A stretch of 63,642 nucleotides of DNA, counting the filler, from Octopus bimaculoides (taxonomy: Eukaryota), in assembly GCF_001194135.2 (NCBI RefSeq). It is 5 parts of 4 records of this genome, joined end to end, with 100 filler letters (N's around TTAATTAATTAA, not from the genome) between each part and the next. Parts side by side here need not be neighbours in the genome. Positions count along the whole stretch, not along the records: positions 1 to 25,010 come from NC_069006.1; 4 more parts are not named here. One strand, 5' to 3'. A program made the translations under genes and the position numbers. The notes beneath the pieces are model-generated. The model saw only the letters and a program-made list of their open reading frames with translations. It had not been told where the DNA came from and made no database searches. Of this stretch, positions 16,357 through 24,738 are shown piece by piece. The first letter of the stretch is position 1; the number at the start of each line of letters is the position of its first letter.

Positions 16357-19300
16357 GCATCATCATCATCATCATAATCAACATTGTCGTCATCGTCATC
16401 ATCACTATCATCATCACCACCACCACCACCATCATCATCATCATTCTAATGTCCATTTTTCCATCTTTCTGTGAGTCAGATGGAAATTGTGGAGGCAGAT
16501 TTTCAATGGCTGGATGCCTTTGCTGTAACCAAACCTTGCCTGTCTCCAAGGGAGGTAATATTCCCCTTGGCTGGATATCTTTCACACAGAAGAGGAGAAG
16601 TGAAGGAAGCCGCTTGCACGACGGTGATACTTGTTTACAACAATTACACAATGTCAAACCAATCAGACAGTAATATACACACACATGCATGCATAAACAT
16701 ACACACACATGCATATACAGACATACACACACATACATACACACATACATACACACATGCATATATACATACGTTTTTACACACACACATGCATATATGC
16801 ATGCATCTTTATACATAACCCCACGCATATACATACACACACATGCATATACAGATATACACACATACATACACACATGCATGCATATATACATACATCT
16901 TTACACACACATACACACACATACACGCACACACACACATGCATATATGCACGCATCTTTATACATAACCCCCACACATATACATACATACACAAACACA
17001 TACATGCATATACAGACATACACATGCATACATAGACACATGCATGCATATATACATACATCTTTACACACAGACACTCACACATACACACGTGCACACA
17101 CACACACACATACACACATGAAGACATACATACATATATGAGCGTTGGGCCTCACAGAGGCCAAGTGGCTGAGTTCCTTTCGAGTGTTGGGCCTTATGGA
17201 GGCAATGACCAAGACCTTTGGCATTAAGTCGTGCTTGAGAAGAAGACCCATCAAGCTGAGCAAAATTTCAGTTGTGGCAGATACTAGTGTCACGCAAATG
17301 GCACCCATGCCAGTGGCACGTAAAAGCACCCAGTACACTCTTAGAGTGGTTGGCATTAGGAAGCGCATCCAGCCATAGAAAACCACGCCAAATCAGAGTG
17401 GAGTCTGGTGCAGCCTTCCAGCTTACCAGCCCTGATCATACAGTTCAACTCATGCCACCATAGACAACAGACATACAGACGTTAAATGATGATGATGATG
17501 ATATATATATATATATATACATATATGAGAAGAAAAAGAAAATGCAGATTGAGAAGTTAATAATTGTTTGTTATTAACAGCAAATTAATCGTCTTCACTT
17601 ACAGCTGTTTCAATTAATACTCAGTAAATATTAAGTAAATATTAAATTTCTATGACCTGAGCATAATATCTTCAGAGAGGGAAAAAATATGCTTTTGTAT
17701 GTTTTATATGTGTTTATGGATTCATTATAGCAGACTGAATGGTATATATGTATGTATGTATCTTTGTATGTACGTACGTATGTATGTATGTATATGTATA
17801 TACTACAGGATTCTTTCAGTTTCCTTCTATGAAACCTACTCAAATGCTTACCGACATTTCTTCCAACTTTACATTCTAAGTTCAAATACCGTCAGGGTCC
17901 ACTTTGCCCTAGATCCTTTTAGGGTCAATAAAATAAGTACAAGTTGAACTCTGGGGTTAATGTAATCAACTANNNNNNNNNNNNNNNNNNNNNNNNNNNN
18001 NNNNNNNNNNNNNNNNNNNNNNNNNNNNNNNNNNNNNNNNNNNNNNNNNNNNNNNNNNNNNNNNNNNNNNNNAACGATTACGCTCAAATGGTGCTATTTA
18101 TGGGCCACTAGCATGGAAGCCATCAACATCATCATCATCATTGTCATCATTTAATGTCTGCTTTCCATGCTGGCATGGACTGGAAAGTTTGACTGAAAAC
18201 TGCTTAGCTGGATGACTGTACCAGGTTCCAGTCGGATTTTAGCTTGTTTTCTTCGGCTGGATGCCCTTCCTCACACCAACAACTCCAAGAGTGTAGTGAG
18301 TTTATTTCCTGTGCCACCGGCACAGGTGCCATTGACCTGAGACCGGCATCAGGCATGACTACAGTCTCACTTGGCTTGACAGGTCTACACAAGCATGGTA
18401 TATTGCCAAGCATCTTGGTCACCTGTCCCTGCTTCCATATATACATAAAAAAGGAAGAAGATGGACAACAGAGCCCTGTCTCCCACCAACTCCTGGATTT
18501 TGAAAGACAACATGAGGCGGGACAATAATTTATTCATTTCAAGGAATTGGTAAAGACAGGAATGGAAACTCCCAAAAGAATGAGAGTATGATGAACAAAT
18601 TGACTGTGAAAGAAAGTATGAATACAGAAGTAAAACCAAGACAAATAAATAAATGCAATAAAAATATAAAGTAAGAAAAATATAGAATAAAACAAGAAGA
18701 CAAACAAAAGACGTTGGTAAAATAAACCTTAAAAATTGATAAGAATTAATATATACGTACATACATACATGTATGTATGTGTGTGTATATATNNNNNNNN
18801 NNNNNNNNNNNNNNNNNNNNNNNNNNNNNNNNNNNNNNNNNNNNNNNNNNNNNNNNNNNNNNNNNNNNNNNNNNNNNNNNNNNNNNNNNNNNNNNNNNNN
18901 NNNNNNNNNNNNNNNNNNNNNNNNNNNNNNNNNNNNNNNNNNNNNNNNNNNNNNNNNNNNNNNNNNNNNNNNNNNNNNNNNNNNNNNNNNNNNNNNNNNN
19001 NNNNNNNNNNNNNNNNNNNNNNNNNNNNNNNNNNNNNNNNNNNNNNNNNNNNNNNNNNNNNNNNNNNNNNNNNNNNNNNNNNNNNNNNNNNNNNNNNNNN
19101 NNNNNNNNNNNNNNNNNNNNNNNNNNNNNNNNNNNNNNNNNNNNNNNNNNNNNNNNNNNNNNNNNNNNNNNNNNNNNNNNNNNNNNNNNNNNNNNNNNNN
19201 NNNNNNNNNNNNNNNNNNNNNNNNNNNNNNNNNNNNNNNNNNNNNNNNNNNNNNNNNNNNNNNNNNNNNNNNNNNNNNNNNNNNNNNNNNNNNNNNNNNN

Positions 19301-20694: not shown

Positions 20695-23600
20695 CATATA
20701 TACGATGGGCTTCTTTCAGTTTCCGTCTTCCAAATACACACACAAGGATTTAGTCGGCCCGAGGCTATAGTAGAAGACACTTGCCCAAGGTGCCACACAG
20801 TGGGACTGAACCCAGAACCATGTGGTTGGTAAGCAAGCTACTTACCACACAGCCACTCCTGCGCCTATATATATACATTTCATATATATATGTATGTATT
20901 GGTGGTGGTGCTGGTGGTGGTGCTGGTGCATAATGATGATGGTGGTGGTGATGATGTTGACGTTTTAATTCAGACCCCTTTAAAAACCTCTTGTTAGATC
21001 ATGTTCTAAATCCAAGTTTAATAATAAAAACGTTACTTTGCTAAATTCTTCATAATTTCAAAAATTAATTGAAACAAACGCAGCATATTTCAATAGAAAT
21101 CACCATCATCATCATTACACCATCACCACCAGCATTACCAGCACATCATCATCATCATCATCATCATCCATTGTTTAATGTCCACCTTCCATGCTGGCAT
21201 GGATGGGATGGTTTCGCAAGAGCCGGCCAGGTCAAAGCCTGCACCAGGCATCTGTGACTGTTTCAGCAGGATTTTCTACAGCTAGATGCCCTTCCTAACA
21301 CCAACCACACAGTAGAGTGGACTTAGTACTTTTTACATGGCACCACCACAGGCAAGGTCAGTTTTACAGCCGGACGCCCTTCGTAACACCAACCACTTTA
21401 CATTGTGGACTGAGTGCTTTTAAGTGGCCCCTTCACTGACAGGGTCAACAAGAACTTGCAACGCAAAAAAAAAAAAAACTTTTAAGAGGGGAGGTCATAA
21501 AAAACAAAATTGTTTATGAAAAGATTAACGTGATCTAAATTAAAATCTTTCATTAAAATTCCATGTTTCGAGGGTGAGTCAAAAAGTAATGCCATTTTGT
21601 TTAGGATAGGTTTAATTACCAACACAGGAACATGTATCATACATCAAAATGAAGCTGGTCCTCTGTGGATCACATCCCTACTCCTCAACATAGTCACCAT
21701 TTCTCTCAATAGCAATGTTCCACCTTCGAATGAGAGCATGTATCCCTGCCCCGTAAAATTATGTTGACTGTTCTTTGAGCCATTTCTTCACTACTTCCAC
21801 ACTCACCAGATTTAGTGCCTTCAGACTATTATCTCTTCGGCACCACGAAAGAGGGTTCGAGAGGTAAACATTATTCCAGTGACGAGGAAGTGAAAACTGT
21901 AGTGAAGAAGTGGCTCAAAGAACAGCCAACAGAATTTTACGGGGCAGGGATACACGCTCTCATTCGAAGGTGGAACGTTGCCATTGAAAGAAACGGTGAC
22001 TATGTTGAGGAGTAGGGATGTGATCCACAGAGGACCAGCTTCATTTTGATGTATGATACATGTTCCTGTGTTGGTAATTATACCTGTCCTAAACAAAATG
22101 GCATTACTTTTTGACCCACCCTCATAATTTGTGTTTCAAACACCAGCTTAATAATGGAAAAGTTACTTTAGTAAATTCTTCATAGTTTTCAAAATTGAAA
22201 CTATGGCATTGTATTTCAGTAGAAATATGTTTTAAAAAAGGTTAAAATAACCTAAATTTAAAACATTCCATCAAAATTTCATGTTAATTCATACAGTTCT
22301 ATATTTAAGAGATGAATAATTATGTACATTATTTACATTTGACGGATATTTGTCCTCATCTTGTTTGTTGTTAACACAACGTTTCAGCTGATATACCCTC
22401 CAGCCTTCATCAGGTGTCTTGGGGAAATTTCGAACTTGGGTTTTCATTCCTAAAGTAGTTTTCGATGTTATTATTATTATTATTCAGGTCACTGCCTGGA
22501 ATCGAACTCGGAACTTTGGGGTTAGTAGCCCACACTCTTAACCACTATGCCATATGCCCATGGTTCGAAATTTCCCCAAAACACCTGATGAAGGCTGCAG
22601 GGTATATTAGCCAAAACGTTGTGTTAACAACAAGATGAGGACAAATATCCATCAAATGTAAATAATGTAAATAATATTAATTCATGTCTCAAAGACCAAC
22701 TTAATAATCCTTTCTATTACGGGCACAAGGCCTGAAATTTGGGGGAGGGGACTGGTTGATTACACCAACCCCAGTGTTTCACTGGTATTTAATTTATGAA
22801 CCCCGAAAGGATGAAATGCAAAGTCGAGCTCAGCGGAATTTGAACTTAGAACGTAGTGACAGGTCAAATACTGCTAAGCATTTTGTCTGGCATGCTAACG
22901 ACTCTGCCAGCTCACTGCCTTATACCAACTTAATAATGACAATGTTACTTTACCAAATTCTTTATTATTTTCAAAATTAACTGACAGTGTATTTCAACAG
23001 AAATATGGTAACAGAAGGGTTAACATCAAAGAACAGGAAAAACAGATGACAGCAACACTAACAGCAAAACAATTAACAACATTTTTGTTAATTACTTACA
23101 TTTGGTGGACGTGGGGAAGATGTTAAGTTTGGTAAAATTCTTTCTTTCCTACTCAAACATTTCTCCTTTCTTTGATAGTTTCCTTTCTGTTGGTTATCCT
23201 TAGTAACATGGAATGGTAAACACTCCGTTCCACTGTTCTCCAAACCACTGTTAGATTCTTCACAAGGTAACACATCTCCAAAGCTGTTACTCTGATTGTC
23301 AACACAGTCAATTTGAGAGACTGACCAGTCTAATGTTGACTTATTCAAAAAATTGATTCCACTGCTCTGTTCTATCTTGTCCTGAACCAAAATATATTCA
23401 TTCCCTGATTTTTTCCCAGAATCAAAACATGTGTTGTCCTTTCTTAATTTTGTATTTGGTTCTTTGTCCTTTTTTTTACGATCTGAATTTAGTTCATTTT
23501 TGTCATTTCCAATAACTGCTGAGATTCCATCATATTTTACATCTTTCATGGAATTTTCATATCTATTTTCTCTGCAATATCCCAACTTTCTGTGGCTATT

Positions 23601-24738
23601 TTCATGATTGTTTAACTTATTACTACAGACCAAATTTCTATGAGAAGAACCATTCAAATTAATTGGTTCATTTGCCATTTGTGGTACATGGCATTCATTT
23701 TCAGCATCAACAGAAGACAAACCATCATTTATGTAAGGAAAACTTAATTTAATTTTATTTATAGAAGTTCTAATGGACCATTCTGAAGAATTTGTGTGAC
23801 AAAGTCTATTGAATTCTTTCAATGGTGATGGCATTGTTTTATTGTTCTCATCAGATGGTTTATTAAAACGATCTACAACATGTTTTCCTTTCCTCTCACG
23901 TTTAAAACAACCCTCTTTTAGATGCTGTCCCATGACTTCATAAGAACCATCCAAATGCAGATGGGATCTGGAACTCTTTGTCACCTCTGTAGCCAACTTC
24001 TTTGGTCTTTTATTAAACTCACTTTCCAAGCGTATAAAATCCAGAGGAATTTCCCCATTTTTTTGGATGTAACTAATGATATTTACATAACGAGAACTTA
24101 ATTTTACAGATTTGTTAGAATTATAATTATCATCTTTCTGTCTTAAATAATCACTTGATGTCTCTAACAAACTCTGATGATTCTTTGGAAATAGATCAAC
24201 AGTTCGTTCTTTCTTGTAATCTACTCTCCTTTTATATTTCTCACCATTTCTTACAGAATCAATTTCATTTCCTGAATTATGAAATATCGGTAAGGAATAA
24301 TAGTCTGGAACATTTGTCTGAAATTGTCCAGTTGGCGCACTGGCTGACCGAAATACATTTTTATTTGTCCTTGAGTATTTCTGACTTGAACTATCATGTT
24401 CATAGATCATGTGATCAGTTTTGGTCACATGATCAGGTCTTATTTGATATTTATAAAAATCTCCTTCATTCTGACAAATGGGGTAACAATGTCCATTGTT
24501 ATAAATCTTCCGGCCACTTTCAGCCAAACTGGAATGAGATCTTTGACTACAGAGTTTATTCCTTTGATATTTCTTAGATTTTGCTTTGGTTTCAGAAATG
24601 ACTAAATCGACTTTGGTAGCTGCTTCCATTTTCAGCCGTTTCCAGGAATTATTTTGAACAAAAGATAAACATCCATTTATTTGTCATCTCCTTCTTCTTC
24701 TCCAGGAAATAAACCACTCCAAATAACAATATTAATTC
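411..24738 (-). CDS. SFI1: SFI1-like centrin-binding repeat protein, multi-exon gene (at least 1130 aa)
   Basis: 13 exons with AG/GT boundaries were read from the sequence. Ten consecutive junctions from 16238 to 717 are phase-compatible. The product has periodic Trp helical repeats, e.g. ATEHIQKLYLMKLFAKWK and ASHFHRKSLLRRFITWR, fitting the Sfi1 consensus AX7LLX3F/LX2W. Orthology versus another Sfi1-repeat protein is inferred, not searched. Confidence 0.7.
991..1179 (-). mobile_element. C-terminal fragment of an RLE-type non-LTR retrotransposon ORF
   Basis: DYKFRFIPVIIGALGYVTLCLNTNLEKLGFSKLERRKLIQRLQIQSITGTVKLSRSLSFKYI*. The IPVIIGALG...LQ..S.TGT pattern fits RLE endonuclease C-termini; cut by a gap. 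Confidence 0.6.
1849..2024 (-). CDS. SFI1: SFI1-like exon RRNVLHQKTFFNQWRW...GAFDTWRRALSNLLLAR (phase 0/2)
   Basis: Acceptor atttctgccag; donor CAG|gtaggg; 176 nt. Confidence 0.9.
2052..2378 (-). mobile_element. Same tRNA-head/HHR-tail element, copy 1
   Basis: Same head, expanded (AAT)n, same tail ending in TGTAAATAA repeats about 25 nt from the 2025 splice acceptor. Confidence 0.8.
2116..2163 (-). ncRNA. Minimal hammerhead, slightly decayed copy
   Basis: GACAC-CUGAUGA-A-GGCUG..CAGCC-GAAAU-GUU/GUGCU; C15.2U and one stem I mismatch. Confidence 0.65.
2775..2988 (-). CDS. SFI1: SFI1-like exon RLHVVYDCER...CFSGWKQ...RRFITWRRR...EAEM (phase 2/0)
   Basis: Acceptor ggttttccag; donor ATG|gtaaaa; 214 nt. 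Confidence 0.85.
3501..3905 (+). mobile_element. SINE family A (GGCGGCGAGCTGGCAGAA head, often dimeric)
   Basis: Shared core GCCTTTCATCCTTTCGGGGTCGATAAA..AAGTACCAG (Meta-domain-like, from recall). Copies near 7.9-8.3, 22.7, 34.3, 45.5, 49.3-51.5 and 57.7 kb. Confidence 0.85.
4030..4134 (-). CDS. SFI1: SFI1-like exon VTKSWHQLIIRK...LSKYFTRWR (phase 2/2)
   Basis: Acceptor atttcttgtag; donor CG|gtaggc; 105 nt. Confidence 0.9.
4511..4697 (-). CDS. SFI1: SFI1-like exon ACFKRWTSTLQK...FIFLQWYR...NKLLAR (phase 1/2)
   Basis: Acceptor atttctccag; donor CAG|gtaaag; 187 nt. Confidence 0.9.
4780..5165 (-). mobile_element. tRNA-derived CORE-like SINE, family B
   Basis: Head TGGCTGTGTGGTAAG...GGTTCAGTCC, then CACCTTGGGCAAGTGTCTT (CORE-like). 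Further copies near 19.9, 20.6-20.9, 24.8, 26.6, 41.4, 43.0, 53.8, 54.8, 55.0, 58.7, 59.7-60.07 and 61.0-61.7 kb. Confidence 0.85.
5340..6667 (+). mobile_element. Tandem copies of a TTAA-ended piggyBac-like MITE, interrupted by SINEs
   Basis: Unit of about 230 bp repeated at 5340, 5570, 6205-6667 and 13250-13840, ending AAAGGG|TTAA. A related TTAACCC-ended family lies at 12902, 21.0-22.3 and 23.0 kb. Confidence 0.6.
5820..6204 (+). mobile_element. tRNA-derived SINE, family C, full length
   Basis: A and B boxes; 12-bp TSD ATATTAGCATTT. Other copies at 58000-58386 (minus, TSD TGTTATTCATT) and 30333-30604. Confidence 0.9.
7676..7773 (-). CDS. SFI1: SFI1-like exon KAIKHWKELHHQVALEKFANHYKSVQKNLQLR (phase 2/1)
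   Basis: Acceptor cctctttctgttcag; donor GAG|gtgaaa; 98 nt. Confidence 0.9.
10347..10390 (-). ncRNA. Degenerate minimal hammerhead copy, probably inactive
   Basis: Core CUGAUGA and GAAAC are present, but stem II is mismatched (GGACG/CAGCC) and the triplet has become GUG. Confidence 0.5.
10462..10606 (-). mobile_element. 3' end of an R4/Dong-like RLE non-LTR retrotransposon inserted in (AAT)n
   Basis: LGTAHILCKTLSIQ* at 10605-10561 plus about 100 nt of 3'UTR, flanked by AAT repeats. An LGTAHILR-type terminus is typical of R4/Dong. Confidence 0.7.
11286..11420 (-). CDS. SFI1: SFI1-like exon FCLRSQQEKWWKRMKMVCFENWR...CWSYMCVR (phase 2/2)
   Basis: Acceptor tttctttttcag; donor CG|gtgagt; 135 nt. 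Confidence 0.9.
12240..12460 (+). mobile_element. Interspersed repeat family E with a (GAT)n tail
   Basis: GTGGTTGGCGTTAGGAAGGGCATCCAGC motif and GATGATGAT tail. Copies near 6.35-6.55, 12.0, 14.27-14.8, 17.1-17.5, 18.1-18.4 and 21.15-21.45 kb. Possibly RTE-LINE related. Confidence 0.75.
12513..12743 (-). CDS. SFI1: SFI1-like exon RFLKKWHRKW...MKLFAKWKNFSQRQKQTR (phase 2/2)
   Basis: Acceptor ttttacatcgttcag; donor AAG|gtatgt; 231 nt; carries a near-consensus Sfi1 repeat. Confidence 0.9.
13975..14166 (-). CDS. SFI1: SFI1-like exon HYTIKKVFHLWKR...HRANQWMLR (phase 2/2)
   Basis: Acceptor ccatcacag; donor CAG|gtaact; 192 nt. Confidence 0.9.
14843..15195. repeat. Compound (CA)/(TA) microsatellite with CATATGGATACAC higher-order units
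   Basis: Direct reading. Similar tracts at 16670-17135, 35340-35690 and 52370-52850 generate many spurious ORFs. Confidence 0.9.
15227..15316 (-). CDS. SFI1: SFI1-like exon KHHRHKCIQVTFHRFYTIFKSHSISLLHYR (phase 2/2)
   Basis: Long pyrimidine tract plus cag acceptor; donor CAG|gtacga; 90 nt. Confidence 0.85.
15393..15693. mobile_element. hAT MITE
   Basis: TIR CAGG(A/G)GTTTTCAAAC; perfect 8-bp TSD ATCTATAC. Confidence 0.9.
16152..16238 (-). CDS. SFI1: SFI1-like exon KQLTLKVWCCWCNYNRHRQHLKTMETAAR (phase 2/2)
   Basis: Acceptor ttttccctccattacag; donor CAG|gtagaa; W-x2-W repeat. Confidence 0.85.
19592..19684 (-). CDS. SFI1: SFI1-like exon LYVSSVVFRFGTLLWREVVCFNYKDNNSQRK (phase 0/0)
   Basis: Acceptor ttcatttcag; donor AAG|gttttt is weak; 93 nt; compatible with the upstream phase-0 exon. 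Confidence 0.55.
21569..22124 (+). mobile_element. Palindromic mariner-derived MITE with about 230-bp inverted arms
   Basis: CGAGGG...CCCTCA|TA ends. The middle encodes the mariner C-terminus HSPDLVPSDYYLF...WLKEQPTEFY..GIHALIRRWNVAIERNGDYVEE. 21569-21800 is the reverse complement of about 21895-22124. Confidence 0.9.
22292..22563 (-). mobile_element. tRNA-headed SINE-like element with Penelope-type HHR tail (best copy)
   Basis: A box TGGCATAGTGG (about 22542-52); B box GAGTTCGATTCC (22498-509); (AAT)n spacer; HHR tail; followed by an inverted copy of the tail at 22563 to about 22685. Confidence 0.8.
22373..22418 (-). ncRNA. Minimal type I hammerhead (Penelope-type), core intact
   Basis: GACAC-CUGAUGA-A-GGCUG(loop)CAGCU-GAAAC-GUU/GUGUU; palindromic ACGU stem III; 5-bp stem I. 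Confidence 0.8.
22580..22625 (+). ncRNA. Minimal hammerhead in the inverted arm, G12A, probably inactive
   Basis: ACAC-CUGAUGA-A-GGCUG..UAGCC-AAAAC-GUU/GUGUU; GAAA has become AAAA at 22613. Confidence 0.55.
23100..24629 (-). CDS. SFI1: SFI1-like first coding exon, 510 codons, low-complexity N/K/S-rich
   Basis: Long ORF ending in a GTAAGT donor at 23099-23094 (phase 0). Acceptor ttttagtcttagatttcgcag ends at 24739. An in-frame TGA lies at 24686-24684, upstream of the ATG. Confidence 0.8.

What the first reader, a model, noticed from the sequence alone, without database searches (positions are those of the whole stretch)
22292..22563. A tRNA-promoter SINE with a Penelope-type hammerhead-ribozyme tail
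Seen: three independent copies (2052-2378, 10295-10719, 22292-22563, all minus) share one order: tRNA-like head with A and B boxes (it resembles tRNA-Ile AAU), (AAT)n spacer, then a tail with a minimal type I HHR. The HHR has CUGAUGA plus an extra A, stem II GGCUG/CAGCY, palindromic ACGU stem III and GUU cleavage (22378/22377). The best copy has no internal T4 on its coding strand; the first T4 is about 16 nt past the end, which fits one Pol III transcript. Established: SINE tails derive from their partner retroelement, and minimal palindromic-stem-III HHRs mark Penelope-like elements (PLEs) and cleave as dimers. Inference: this is a Pol III-driven, self-cleaving SINE mobilised by a PLE rather than a LINE, a SINE/retrozyme hybrid. 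I am not aware of a description of this architecture.
Basis: partly seen in the sequence, partly recalled or inferred. Interest (0 to 1): 0.9.

Follow-up and report, generated by a model that had tools for sequence, protein, structure and literature searches.

The report
Octopus SINE with Penelope-type ribozyme tail
This is a real family of short mobile elements, closest to Octopus bimaculoides sequences, that joins a tRNA-like promoter to a tail carrying a minimal hammerhead ribozyme, and its insertion scars point to copying by Penelope-like retrotransposons rather than by a LINE, a partnership I could not find described.

Summary
Three minus-strand copies (2053-2378, 10302-10744, 22293-22563) share the order tRNA-like head with A and B boxes, (AAT)n spacer, then a roughly 175-nt tail. 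A fourth, tail-only copy lies at 22564-22701 (+). The tail carries a minimal type I hammerhead with all four features published for Penelope-like element (PLE) hammerheads. Only copy c3 is near-intact. "tRNA-Ile" is not supported.

New evidence favours PLE mobilisation:
- 5'-truncated copies in inverted orientation abut the 5' end of the head (c4/c3, and a 24-nt fragment at c2).
- A 34-nt 3' extension is optional and can sit at either end.
- A 9-bp target-site duplication encloses head and tail of c2.
- Targets are AT-rich or (ATT)n.

A translated search found about 70 related clusters, from O. bimaculoides, other sequencing runs and an unidentified eukaryote. Fetched loci show the same module behind two other tRNA-like heads, in inverted pairs, and in 114-129-nt tandem arrays. 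Helices I and II covary between families.

Not shown: the autonomous PLE partner, Pol III transcription and self-cleavage. In a single SINE RNA, cleavage would cut the promoter from the reverse-transcription entry site. I judge this a new variant of known kinds (schistosome Sm-alpha SINE-like elements, PLE hammerheads, retrozymes).

The parts
22293..22563 (-). Copy c3, the full-length and best-preserved SINE: head, (AAT)n, tail and 34-nt extension.
   Evidence: It starts at CCATGGGCAT, as c1 does, about 11 nt upstream of the A box.
22485..22563 (-). tRNA-like head of c3. A box TGGCATAGTGG at 22552-22542; B box GTTCGATTCC at 22507-22498.
   Evidence: ARAGORN detects it only at relaxed thresholds. 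No Rfam tRNA match.
22468..22484 (-). (AAT)n internal spacer of c3. Its length varies between copies.
22373..22418 (-). Minimal type I hammerhead of c3: helix I GACAC/GUGUU, CUGAUGA, bulged A, helix II GGCUGG/UCAGCU, GAAA, palindromic ACGU. Predicted cleavage between 22378 and 22377.
   Evidence: The fold with helices I and II is within 0.6 kcal/mol of the minimum free energy. Covariation across families.
22327..22372 (-). A/C-rich region after the hammerhead (AACAACAAACAAGAUGAGGACAAAUAUCC), ending at the short-type 3' end ...CAAATGTAAATAATG.
   Evidence: The 3' ends of c2 and c1 lie here or within the following 9-mer repeats.
22293..22326 (-). Optional 34-nt 3' extension (TACATAAT TATTCATCTCTTAAATATAGAACTGT).
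   Evidence: Present in c3 and c4 and, inverted, at the 5' end of c2. Absent from the 3' ends of c1 and c2. Conserved in other families.
22564..22701 (+). Copy c4: tail only, 5'-truncated near unit position 125-129, head-to-head with c3. Hammerhead remnant at 22580-22625 (G12 changed to A). Extension at 22668-22701. Its 3' end abuts the (ATT)2 tail of an older SINE.
   Evidence: (I22). The junction shows CCCA(T)GG microhomology.
10302..10720 (-). Copy c2: head 5'-truncated at unit position 33 (10720-10673), (AAT)n, about 185 bp of unique insert (10456-10640), (AAT)5, and tail 10443-10302 with a dead hammerhead (10388-10351).
10721..10744 (+). 24 nt of the extension in inverted orientation, abutting the truncated head of c2. 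This is an extremely 5'-truncated inverted partner.
   Evidence: 1 mismatch in 23 nt, 0 expected by chance.
10745..10753 (-). Upstream copy of the 9-bp direct repeat TACTATTAT, the putative target-site duplication of the whole c2 insertion.
   Evidence: The downstream copy is at 10301-10293.
10293..10301 (-). Downstream copy of the 9-bp direct repeat TACTATTAT.
2053..2378 (-). Copy c1, full length: head 2378-2300 with a degenerate A box, long (AAT/AAC)n spacer 2299-2215, and tail 2214-2053 with four TAAATAATG-like 9-mers. Hammerhead at 2162-2117 (U15.2 and a helix I mismatch). No extension.

Best explanation
What it is. A family of roughly 270-330-bp non-coding retroposons whose closest relatives are Octopus bimaculoides sequences. 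Each unit has three parts:
- a degenerate tRNA-derived head with an internal Pol III promoter (A and B boxes);
- a variable (AAT)n spacer;
- a roughly 175-nt 3' module organised like the pseudo-LTR / 5'-end region of a canonical endonuclease-positive Penelope-like element (PLE).

The 3' module contains a minimal type I hammerhead without helix III and an A/C-rich stretch. It also has a 3' terminus where cDNA synthesis starts at either of two sites 34 nt apart, which gives short ends and extended ends.

Inferred life cycle. Pol III starts about 11 nt upstream of the A box. It reads through head, spacer and tail, because there is no internal T4 run, and stops at a T run in the AT-rich flank. A PLE reverse transcriptase / GIY-YIG endonuclease supplied in trans recognises the 3' module. 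It nicks AT-rich or (ATT)n DNA on both strands and primes reverse transcription from both nicks. This yields head-to-head pairs of variably 5'-truncated copies, with the extension at one or both outer ends.

Role of the hammerhead. It is inherited from the PLE-type module and kept as part of it. In a single SINE RNA it has no helix III. Cleavage would also separate the promoter-bearing 5' part from the reverse-transcription entry site. It is therefore most likely latent in the SINE form. It could act where the module is tandem, as in the 114-129-nt arrays seen in a second organism, or with PLE protein.

Shown: the architecture, its recurrence in other loci and families, the insertion scars and the hammerhead covariation. 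Inferred: Pol III transcription, the PLE partner, and when or whether the ribozyme cuts.
For: 1. One unit.
- All 3 heads in the window are followed by tails in the same orientation, with the same junction (AAT)n-ACATCGAA.
- c1 and c3 start at the same base.
- The inverted partners abut the 5' end of the head, not of the tail.
- A 9-bp direct repeat encloses the inverted fragment, head and tail of c2.
- P0036, from assembly GCA_001194135.2, fuses this head's 5' end to the tail.
- Two other families have different tRNA-like heads, no (AAT)n and the same module: L002 10022-9710 (-) and L008 about 548-890.

2. PLE-type hammerhead. [quoted passage not shown] Helix I is 5 bp and helix II is 6 bp.

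3. Hammerhead structure is conserved across 15 copies from about 5 families.
- 81% of cells are paired, against 14-53% when partners are slid by 1-3 columns.
- Both-sided changes occur at one helix I pair (C:G to U:A) and two helix II pairs (U:A to C:G; G.U to A-U or U-A).
- ACGU is nearly invariant.

4. PLE insertion hallmarks, as described.
- Frequent 5' truncation.
- An inverted 5'-truncated copy adjacent to the 5' end: window c4/c3 and c2; L003/L004; L002; L005; L007; also visible in ORFs P0026, P0030, P0051 and P0054.
- An optional 30-40-bp extension at either end. It is 34 nt here and about 40 nt in L002 arrays compared with the L002 SINE. In L006 only the last array unit carries it.
- AT-rich or microsatellite targets.
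- Partial tandem arrays.

5. Geometry. The hammerhead cut site lies 51 nt from the short end and 85 nt from the long end. In the Anolis PLE, reverse transcription starts 85-92 nt downstream of the hammerhead cut.

6. Coding-like frame. The whole c3 tail is open in one frame for 59 codons, matched by only 34 of 5000 shuffles.

7. Terminators. No internal T4 run, and T4-T5 runs lie shortly after the ends.
Against: - No autonomous PLE (RT plus GIY-YIG) sharing the module was found or could be searched for. The only reverse-transcriptase ORFs near related arrays are RTE-type LINEs, and their 3' ends do not resemble the module.
- None of the roughly 70 translated relatives is a long ORF continuing into a reverse transcriptase.
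- The window holds only four copies, all decayed by about 5-13%. Clear target-site duplications exist for one insertion only.
- The 3' 9-mer repeats (TAAATAATG)n resemble the short tandem repeats at the 3' ends of some LINE clades.
- The heads are not recognised as tRNA by ARAGORN at default settings or by Rfam.
- Pol III transcription and ribozyme activity are untested.
- The nearest-neighbour model does not favour the double-hammerhead dimer: -24.3 kcal/mol against 2 x -13.6.
- The covariation score exceeds shuffles only modestly (10 of 500), and the copies are related by descent.
Confidence: 0.68

Rival explanations
1. Two independent elements. A simple tRNA-derived SINE ends in (AAT)n. A separate short non-autonomous PLE derivative (the hammerhead module) preferentially lands in (AAT)n/(ATT)n microsatellites. 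Head and tail are then neighbours, not one transcript.
For: - The PLE endonuclease prefers 5'-ATT-3' and microsatellites.
- c4 and several fetched copies are tail-only.
- c2 has about 185 bp between its two (AAT)n runs.
- The module exists without any head in tandem arrays.
Against: - All 3 heads carry a tail in the same orientation with an identical junction, and no head-only copy exists in the window.
- The (ATT)23 run at 3436-3504 has no tail insertion.
- Inverted partners and the c2 direct repeat bracket head plus tail.
- L002 and L008 join other tRNA-like heads to the module without any (AAT)n.
- P0036 fuses head to tail.
Confidence: 0.1
2. An ordinary LINE-dependent SINE, for example with an RTE, CR1 or L2-type partner that leaves short 3' tandem repeats. 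The hammerhead-like body is then a conserved SINE domain of other or no function.
For: - The 3' end consists of 1-4 copies of a 9-mer.
- 5' truncation also occurs with LINEs.
- RTE ORFs lie within 5-8 kb of related arrays in L002 and L005.
- Conserved SINE bodies are known to derive from LINE 5' UTRs.
Against: - An inverted 5'-truncated partner that includes the element's own 3' end, together with an optional 30-40-nt extension at either end, is described as not seen with LINE target-primed reverse transcription.
- The RTE copies share no sequence with the module.
- The motif has all four PLE min-HHR features and covaries.
- A systematic Repbase survey found only RTE and Vingi contributing to SINE bodies, and neither carries a hammerhead.
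Confidence: 0.12
3. A true retrozyme-like replicator. The hammerhead self-cleaves efficiently, the RNA is circularised by a tRNA ligase, and rolling-circle reverse transcription gives new copies. The tRNA-like head only supplies transcription.
For: - The same module forms 114-129-nt tandem arrays with intact min-HHRs in another organism.
- Metazoan retrozymes are proposed to be non-autonomous PLE derivatives.
- The hammerhead structure is conserved.
Against: - Octopus copies are dispersed single units with one hammerhead each. One cut cannot release a unit-length RNA, and it would remove the promoter from the reverse-transcription entry site.
- c4 is truncated upstream of the hammerhead, not at the cut site.
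- PLE min-HHRs have low activity in vitro, and hammerhead mutants did not affect insertion in vitro.
Confidence: 0.07
4. A foldback or MITE-type DNA transposon whose terminal inverted repeats are the tail sequences.
For: The composite 22293-22701 has 135-nt inverted arms with matching outer ends.
Against: - c1 has no inverted arm.
- c2 has a 24-nt left arm but lacks the matching right terminus.
- Arm lengths differ between loci, and the two arms of c3/c4 differ by 13%.
- Many tail-only and tandem forms exist.
Confidence: 0.03

Closest known systems
Sm-alpha / Sj-alpha SINE-like elements of schistosomes (Ferbeyre et al. 1998; Laha et al. 2000; summarised in PMC6765202)
   Same: Short non-coding retroposons. 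A Pol III-type promoter is followed on the same strand by a type I hammerhead. They are dispersed and partly tandem.
   Different: - Sm-alpha carries a canonical hammerhead with loop-loop contacts and a short helix III, and it cleaves well in vitro.
- Here the motif is the PLE-type minimal variant: no helix III, a bulged nucleotide after A9 and a 6-bp helix II.
- Here the copies show PLE-type insertion scars and an (AAT)n spacer.
- There is no sequence similarity.
- I could not read the Sm-alpha primary papers.
Minimal hammerheads in pseudo-LTRs of Penelope-like elements (Cervera and de la Pena 2014, PMC4209133; Frangieh et al. 2024, PMC11167929)
   Same: - Same ribozyme architecture, with four of four diagnostic features.
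- Single dispersed motifs and pairs 100-700 bp apart on opposite strands.
- Reverse-transcription start about 85-90 nt downstream of the cut site.
- An optional 30-40-bp tail and AT-rich targets.
   Different: - There the motif sits in an autonomous RT plus GIY-YIG element or its truncated copies.
- Here it sits behind a tRNA-like Pol III head in a unit of about 300 bp with no coding capacity.
Metazoan non-LTR retrozymes (Cervera and de la Pena 2020, PMC7229834; Li et al. 2026 bioRxiv 10.64898/2026.07.22.740005)
   Same: - Non-autonomous, hammerhead-bearing and thought to depend on PLEs.
- The related arrays in L002, L005 and L006 are tandem repeats with one type I hammerhead per unit.
   Different: - Retrozymes are defined as tandem repeats of 170-400 nt, mostly with classical hammerheads, and are reported to lack promoters.
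- The octopus copies are single dispersed units with their own Pol III-type promoter.
- The related arrays have units of only 114-129 nt.
tRNA-derived SINEs whose body or tail comes from the partner retrotransposon (LINE 3' tails; RTE/Vingi 5'-UTR-derived bodies, Kojima 2018, PMC5786205)
   Same: Composite build: a small-RNA head, a linker and a partner-derived module. The partner-derived block is conserved across distant SINE families.
   Different: - The donor here appears to be a PLE, a class absent from that systematic survey.
- Insertions carry inverted partners and an optional extension instead of plain LINE-type ends.
Non-autonomous Chlamys PLE derivatives such as MRC1 in Chlamydomonas (Craig et al. 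2021, PMC8557442)
   Same: Short non-coding elements that share the 3' end of autonomous PLEs and form pseudo-LTRs and head-to-tail multimers.
   Different: Those have no tRNA-like head and no canonical hammerhead, and they occur in green algae.

Membership tests
SINE (tRNA-derived, SINE2 type) | Internal Pol III promoter: A box and B box at tRNA-like spacing near the 5' end. | tested here: met
   In c3 the A box TGGCATAGTGG is at +12 and the B box GTTCGATTCC at +57. The B box is present in all three heads. The A box is degenerate in c1 and lost in the truncated c2. This is sequence evidence only; transcription was not tested.
SINE (tRNA-derived, SINE2 type) | Head recognisably derived from a tRNA. 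| tested here: inconclusive
   ARAGORN finds none at default settings. At 80% thresholds it gives an irregular cloverleaf with no isotype. Rfam gives no tRNA match at E<=10. The tRNA-Ile(AAU) assignment is not supported.
SINE (tRNA-derived, SINE2 type) | Short, non-coding, dispersed copies with variable 5' truncation and target-site duplications. | tested here: met
   Four copies are dispersed over 20 kb, and two are 5'-truncated. A 9-bp direct repeat flanks c2. Duplications are unclear for c1 and for the c3/c4 pair.
SINE (tRNA-derived, SINE2 type) | 3' module shared with an autonomous partner in the same genome. | not testable with these tools
   No eukaryotic genome search was available. Scans of the viral, metagenome and prokaryote-genome collections gave 0 matches.
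PLE-type minimal hammerhead (min-HHR) | Catalytic boxes CUGANGA and GAAA, with a U-H cleavage site. | tested here: met
   Present in c1, c2 and c3 and in the consensus. c4 has AAAA. c2 lost the U-H site through a 3-nt deletion.
PLE-type minimal hammerhead (min-HHR) | [quoted passage not shown] | tested here: met
   An extra A is present in 4 of 4 window copies and in all 15 aligned relatives.
PLE-type minimal hammerhead (min-HHR) | G10.1-C11.1 closing pair and a long helix II (6-8 bp). | tested here: met
   The pair is G-C in c1, c2, c4 and most relatives, and G.U in c3. Helix II is 6 bp.
PLE-type minimal hammerhead (min-HHR) | No helix III; positions 15.1-16.1 palindromic, so that two copies can pair. 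| tested here: met
   ACGU is present in c2, c3 and c4, and AUGU in c1. Across relatives A-U is 15 of 15 and C-G is 13 of 15.
PLE-type minimal hammerhead (min-HHR) | Self-cleavage, as a dimer or with protein. | not testable with these tools
   Only energy estimates are available. The monomer with helices I and II is at -13.0 kcal/mol against a minimum of -13.6. The double-hammerhead dimer is at -24.3 against 2 x -13.6.
PLE-mobilised insertion | An inverted 5'-truncated copy immediately adjacent to the 5' end. | tested here: met
   Seen at window c4/c3 and c2, and at L003/L004, L002, L005 and L007.
PLE-mobilised insertion | An optional 30-40-bp extension ("tail") at one or either end. | tested here: met
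   A 34-nt extension is present at the 3' ends of c3 and c4 and, inverted, at the 5' end of c2. It is absent from the 3' ends of c1 and c2. It is conserved in other families and confined to the last array unit in L006.
PLE-mobilised insertion | AT-rich, 5'-ATT-3' or microsatellite target preference. | tested here: inconclusive
   c4 abuts the (ATT)n tail of an older SINE. c1 lies next to (TA)n. The c2 duplication is TACTATTAT. There are too few sites for statistics.
PLE-mobilised insertion | Sequence identity of the module to the pseudo-LTR or 5' end of an RT plus GIY-YIG element. | not testable with these tools
   No PLE ORF was found in the window or in about 105 kb of fetched loci. The RVT_1 hits there are RTE LINEs.
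Non-LTR retrozyme | Tandem repeats with a type I hammerhead in each unit. | tested here: not met
   The window copies are single dispersed units. Relatives in L002, L005 and L006 do form arrays of 2.5-3.5 units.
Rfam hammerhead families (Hammerhead_1, _3, HH9, HH10, _II) | A covariance-model match. | tested here: not met
   No match at E<=10 around c3 and none at E<=1 in the intact L002 arrays. These models expect a helix III.

The most novel reading that the evidence does not exclude
These elements would be the first recognised SINEs that depend on Penelope-like elements. Several independent tRNA-like heads, in octopus and at least one other marine eukaryote, have captured the same conserved roughly 125-nt PLE-type module. 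That module runs from the minimal hammerhead through the reverse-transcription entry site to the optional extension, and it also propagates on its own as mini-retrozyme arrays. The hammerhead block would then be a conserved SINE domain kept because the PLE enzyme needs it. SINEs, retrozymes and PLEs would be linked in one system.
Probability: 0.45. Interest if true: 0.8.

Novelty: new variant of a known kind. Interest (0 to 1): 0.68.

Why it matters
- SINEs are taught as parasites of LINEs. A SINE class that parasitises Penelope-like elements would widen that rule.
- It would explain a share of the thousands of orphan minimal hammerheads scattered in invertebrate genomes.
- It would give a compact, naturally optimised RNA substrate of about 125 nt for studying how PLE reverse transcriptases pick and prime their template. 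That mechanism has only just been opened up in vitro.
- It offers a direct test of whether PLE hammerheads are catalysts or protein-binding scaffolds. In a SINE the promoter lies upstream of the cut site, so cleavage should be selected against, yet the fold is conserved.
- For genome annotation, these units and their inverted or tandem composites are likely to be misfiled as unknown repeats, foldbacks or even exons. P0002 and P0036 are annotated octopus "proteins".

Tried and rejected
- Rfam scans of the window, the c3 region, L008 and the L002 arrays gave no hammerhead or tRNA family. The window hits are microsatellite-driven miRNA noise.
- ARAGORN found nothing on the window or on L002.
- The first translated search used a hand-made consensus ORF and found nothing. 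The later exhaustive search with the true c3 frame worked.
- DNA pattern scans of viral, metagenome (twice) and prokaryote-genome collections gave 0 matches.
- An empty-site test through the ortholog failed. Contig L001 (85% identity) stops inside the older neighbouring SINE at window position 22874, before reaching c4/c3.
- Partner search:
  - No reverse transcriptase or GIY-YIG domain was found in the window.
  - The reverse-transcriptase ORFs in L002 and L005 are RTE LINEs unrelated to the module.
  - In L009 the tail sits inside a LINE reverse-transcriptase fragment, which reads as an ordinary nested insertion.
- P0004 and P0035, the long "hits", are repeat-driven false positives. P0077 is an unrelated bacterial protein placed in a cluster.
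- The idea that the tail encodes the N-terminus of the PLE ORF is not confirmed. The frame is unusually open, but no long protein carries it.
- The region after the hammerhead shows no significant fold (z about 0.2). The hammerhead fold alone gives z of -1.4.
- Twin priming by a LINE is rejected, because the inverted piece duplicates the element's own 3' end rather than an internal segment.
- A full-text search for the sequences themselves found no paper.
- The Ferbeyre 1998 and Lunse 2017 papers are not held.


Full report
**1. What is in the window**

The piece is AT-rich, gap-containing eukaryotic DNA full of microsatellites and several SINE families.

- c1, at 2378 to about 2053 (-), is full length.
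- c2, at 10720 to 10302 (-), has its head truncated at unit position 33 and about 185 bp of unique DNA inside its spacer.
- c3, at 22563 to 22293 (-), is full length and the best preserved.
- c4, at 22564 to 22701 (+), is tail only.

Pairwise identities are 87-95%, so the copies are moderately old. c1 and c3 begin at the same sequence, CCATGGGCAT, about 11 nt upstream of the A box.

**2. The head**

c3 has a perfect A box (TGGCATAGTGG, 22552-22542) and a B box (GTTCGATTCC, 22507-22498) at tRNA-like spacing. The B box is present in all three heads.

The head is too degenerate to be called a tRNA:
- ARAGORN finds nothing at default settings and only an irregular cloverleaf with no isotype at 80% thresholds.
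- Rfam gives no tRNA match at E<=10.

No copy has a T4 run on its sense strand, and T4-T5 runs follow 10-25 nt after the ends. This allows one Pol III transcript but does not prove it.

**3. The hammerhead**

In c3 the motif reads GACAC-CUGAUGA-A-GGCUGG-AGGGUAUA-UCAGCU-GAAA-CG-U-U, then the cut, then GUGUU.

- The core pattern occurs 4 times with 0 expected.
- A structural descriptor found nothing in 30 Mb of random sequence.
- The motif has the four traits that Cervera and de la Pena (2014) give as diagnostic of PLE minimal hammerheads. [quoted passage not shown] Helix I is short and helix II is long.
- Rfam hammerhead models do not detect it, even in intact relatives.

Every window copy carries at least one damaging change: G.U at 10.1-11.1 in c3, U15.2 in c1, a 3-nt deletion at the cut site in c2, and G12 changed to A in c4. 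Only the consensus is canonical.

**4.

(a) c4 lies head-to-head with c3. Its truncated 5' end meets the first bases of the c3 head through a CCCA(T)GG microhomology.

(b) The element has two kinds of 3' end. c1 and c2 stop at or just after ...CAAATGTAAATAATG. c3 and c4 continue for 34 nt (TACATAAT TATTCATCTCTTAAATATAGAACTGT).

(c) The last 24 nt of that extension occur once more in the window, inverted, exactly abutting the truncated head of c2. There is 1 mismatch in 23 nt and 0 matches are expected by chance.

(d) A 9-bp direct repeat, TACTATTAT, flanks the whole of c2: inverted fragment, head, spacer and tail.

(e) The c4 3' end abuts the (ATT)n tail of an older SINE, and c1 lies beside (TA)n.

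These are the features that Craig et al. (2021) and Frangieh et al. (2024) describe for PLE insertions:
- frequent 5' truncation;
- an inverted 5'-truncated copy adjacent to the 5' end;
- a 30-40-bp "tail" at either end, which corresponds to two reverse-transcription start sites;
- nicking of both strands at AT-rich 5'-ATT-3' sites;
- a bias towards microsatellites.

The distance from the hammerhead cut to the long end (85 nt) also matches the 85-92 nt inferred for the Anolis PLE.

**5. Relatives elsewhere**

DNA pattern scans of the viral, metagenome and prokaryote collections found nothing.

The c3 tail is open in one frame for 59 codons, which only 34 of 5000 shuffles reach. An exhaustive HMMER search with that translation returned 74 hits. 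Two are repeat-driven false positives. The rest are short ORFs called across homologous elements.

- The best hit, P0002 (88% identity), is a UniRef entry from Octopus bimaculoides.
- P0036, from assembly GCA_001194135.2, fuses this very head's 5' end to the tail.
- The window's neighbouring 513-aa ORF has a 78%-identical ortholog in run SRR11869385.

The window therefore most likely comes from an octopus close to O. bimaculoides. This is inferred from these hits.

**6. Fetched loci**

| Locus | Source | What it shows |
|---|---|---|
| L003/L004 | SRR11869385, SRR11869394 | Two 5'-truncated tails head-to-head, both with the extension |
| L002 | ENA ERZ21867824, 267-kb contig | A complete unit at 10022-9710 (-) with a different tRNA-like head, no (AAT)n, the same module (82% identity over 68 nt, E=5e-15), the short 3' end and a T5 run right after. 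It sits head-to-head with a + strand array of 2.7 units of 129 nt, each with an intact min-HHR |
| L005 | same assembly | An inverted pair and a 2.5-unit array |
| L006 | same assembly | A third family with 114-nt units. Only the last unit carries the extension |
| L007 | same assembly | An inverted pair of an octopus-like family |
| L008 | ERR1711875 | A third tRNA-like head, a linker, the min-HHR, the extension and a T5 run |

The extension block (C)CTCATCTC..AAATATAGA is conserved across all these families. It therefore belongs to the element and is not flanking DNA.

Several group B ORFs (P0026, P0030, P0051, P0054) read through an inverted copy into a sense copy. This shows that the head-to-head arrangement is common.

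**7. Hammerhead covariation**

I aligned 15 copies from about five families and tested the structure helix I + helix II + palindrome.
- 81% of cells are paired, against 14-53% when partners are slid by 1-3 columns.
- Helix II is 89% paired.
- Three pairs change on both sides: helix I C:G to U:A, helix II U:A to C:G, and G.U to A-U or U-A.
- ACGU is almost invariant.
- The covariation score is 0.249 against a shuffled mean of 0.202, reached by 10 of 500 shuffles.

The copies are related and partly decayed, so this is moderate and not decisive support for a maintained fold.

**8. Mechanism**

The best-supported reading is a composite SINE. A Pol III head drives a transcript that ends in a PLE-type 3' module. 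A PLE RT/GIY-YIG enzyme supplied in trans recognises that module and primes at one of two internal sites on nicks in both DNA strands.

Role of the hammerhead:
- In a single SINE RNA it has helices I and II (-13.0 kcal/mol against a minimum of -13.6) but no helix III. The double-hammerhead dimer is not favoured by the energy model.
- Published PLE min-HHRs cleave weakly, only as dimers or multimers or with PLE protein. Hammerhead mutants did not impair insertion in vitro.
- A cut would sever the promoter from the reverse-transcription entry site. Kojima (2018) makes the same argument for ribozymes in SINE bodies.

I therefore take the ribozyme to be an inherited and conserved part of the module. 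It is probably latent in SINE RNAs and potentially active in the tandem arrays. This step is inference.

**9. What could not be done**

- No eukaryotic genome could be searched. There is therefore no genome-wide consensus, no head/tail census, no Dfam or Repbase look-up and, above all, no test for an autonomous PLE sharing the module.
- The reverse-transcriptase ORFs seen near arrays are RTE LINEs with unrelated ends.
- The empty-site test failed because the ortholog contig ends in a neighbouring repeat.

**10. Comparison with what is known**

Four things are established:
- Pol III-promoter SINE-like elements with a hammerhead, Sm-alpha and Sj-alpha.
- Minimal hammerheads in PLE pseudo-LTRs and scattered as orphans.
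- Retrozymes as probable PLE dependants.
- Non-autonomous PLEs in algae and butterflies.

Searches of the held literature did not turn up a tRNA-headed SINE whose 3' module and insertion scars are PLE-type. A systematic Repbase survey of SINE-LINE sharing reports only RTE and Vingi as body donors.

I file the finding as a new variant of known kinds. Confidence is about 0.68 that PLEs are the mobilising partner. Interest is about 0.68. It would rise if the partner PLE is found, and fall if the family is already catalogued with a LINE partner.

Noticed in passing
window 3505-3667 (+), 3734-3851 (+), 17853-17970 (+), 22708-22925 (-): An older SINE family that starts AAGGCGGCGAG(C/T)TGGCAGAG and ends in (ATT)n. 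The copy at 22708-22925 is also present at the orthologous site in a related species (L001, 85% identity). Its (ATT)n tail is the target of the c4/c3 insertion.
   Followed up: partly
window 10800-10960 (+) and 7130-7290 (-): Two further tRNA-like SINEs share a conserved central block (GAGCAARACACTTYATTTC.CATTGCT.CAGTCCACTCAGCT.GCAAAAATGAG). They are probably members of a known conserved-domain SINE superfamily.
   Followed up: no
window 23088-24629 (-): A 513-aa ORF with no Pfam domain. It is 78% identical to a 506-aa ORF in Logan run SRR11869385, so it is probably a large exon of a conserved gene.
   Followed up: partly
window 21570-21794 and 21899-22123: A foldback with 225-nt arms that are 95% complementary. 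One arm encodes ...EEVKTVVKKWLKEQPTEFYGAGIHALIRRWNVAIERNGDYVEE*, which from memory looks like a mariner transposase C-terminus. Pfam gave no supporting hit.
   Followed up: partly
window 5279-5316 (-), beside a 232-bp tandem duplication at 5336-5800: A second match to the relaxed min-HHR descriptor (CUGAAGA ... GAAAUGUA). Its helix II is made of G.U and A.U pairs only. It is not part of the repeated unit and is probably a chance match.
   Followed up: partly
window 10456-10640 (-): About 185 bp of DNA unique in the window sits inside the (AAT)n spacer of copy c2, flanked by AAT repeats on both sides. It could be a later insertion into the spacer or a subfamily variant.
   Followed up: partly
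L002 10027-10379, L005 10154-10520, L006 10116-10500: Tandem arrays of 2.5-3.5 units (114-129 nt) of the same hammerhead module, without any head. Those in L002 and L006 carry intact min-HHRs; the L005 units are mutated and fail the structural descriptor. They are retrozyme-like but shorter than the 170-400 nt reported for animal retrozymes.
   Followed up: partly
L005 10001-10540 and 3162-5564; L006; L007 (ENA ERZ21867824): Gene calls on these eukaryotic contigs read TGA as Trp. This appears to be an artefact of a metagenome gene caller. The source organism of the assembly is unknown.
   Followed up: no
P0002 (UniRef A0A0L8FV75_OCTBM) and P0036 (GCA_001194135.2 gene model with EF-hand_2): Annotated octopus "proteins" that are translations of this SINE's tail or head-tail fusion. 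They are probably annotation artefacts or exonised SINE copies.
   Followed up: partly
L002 2061-2959 and L005 3162-5564: RTE-type LINE reverse-transcriptase ORFs lie 4.5-8 kb from the arrays. Their ends share no sequence with the module.
   Followed up: partly
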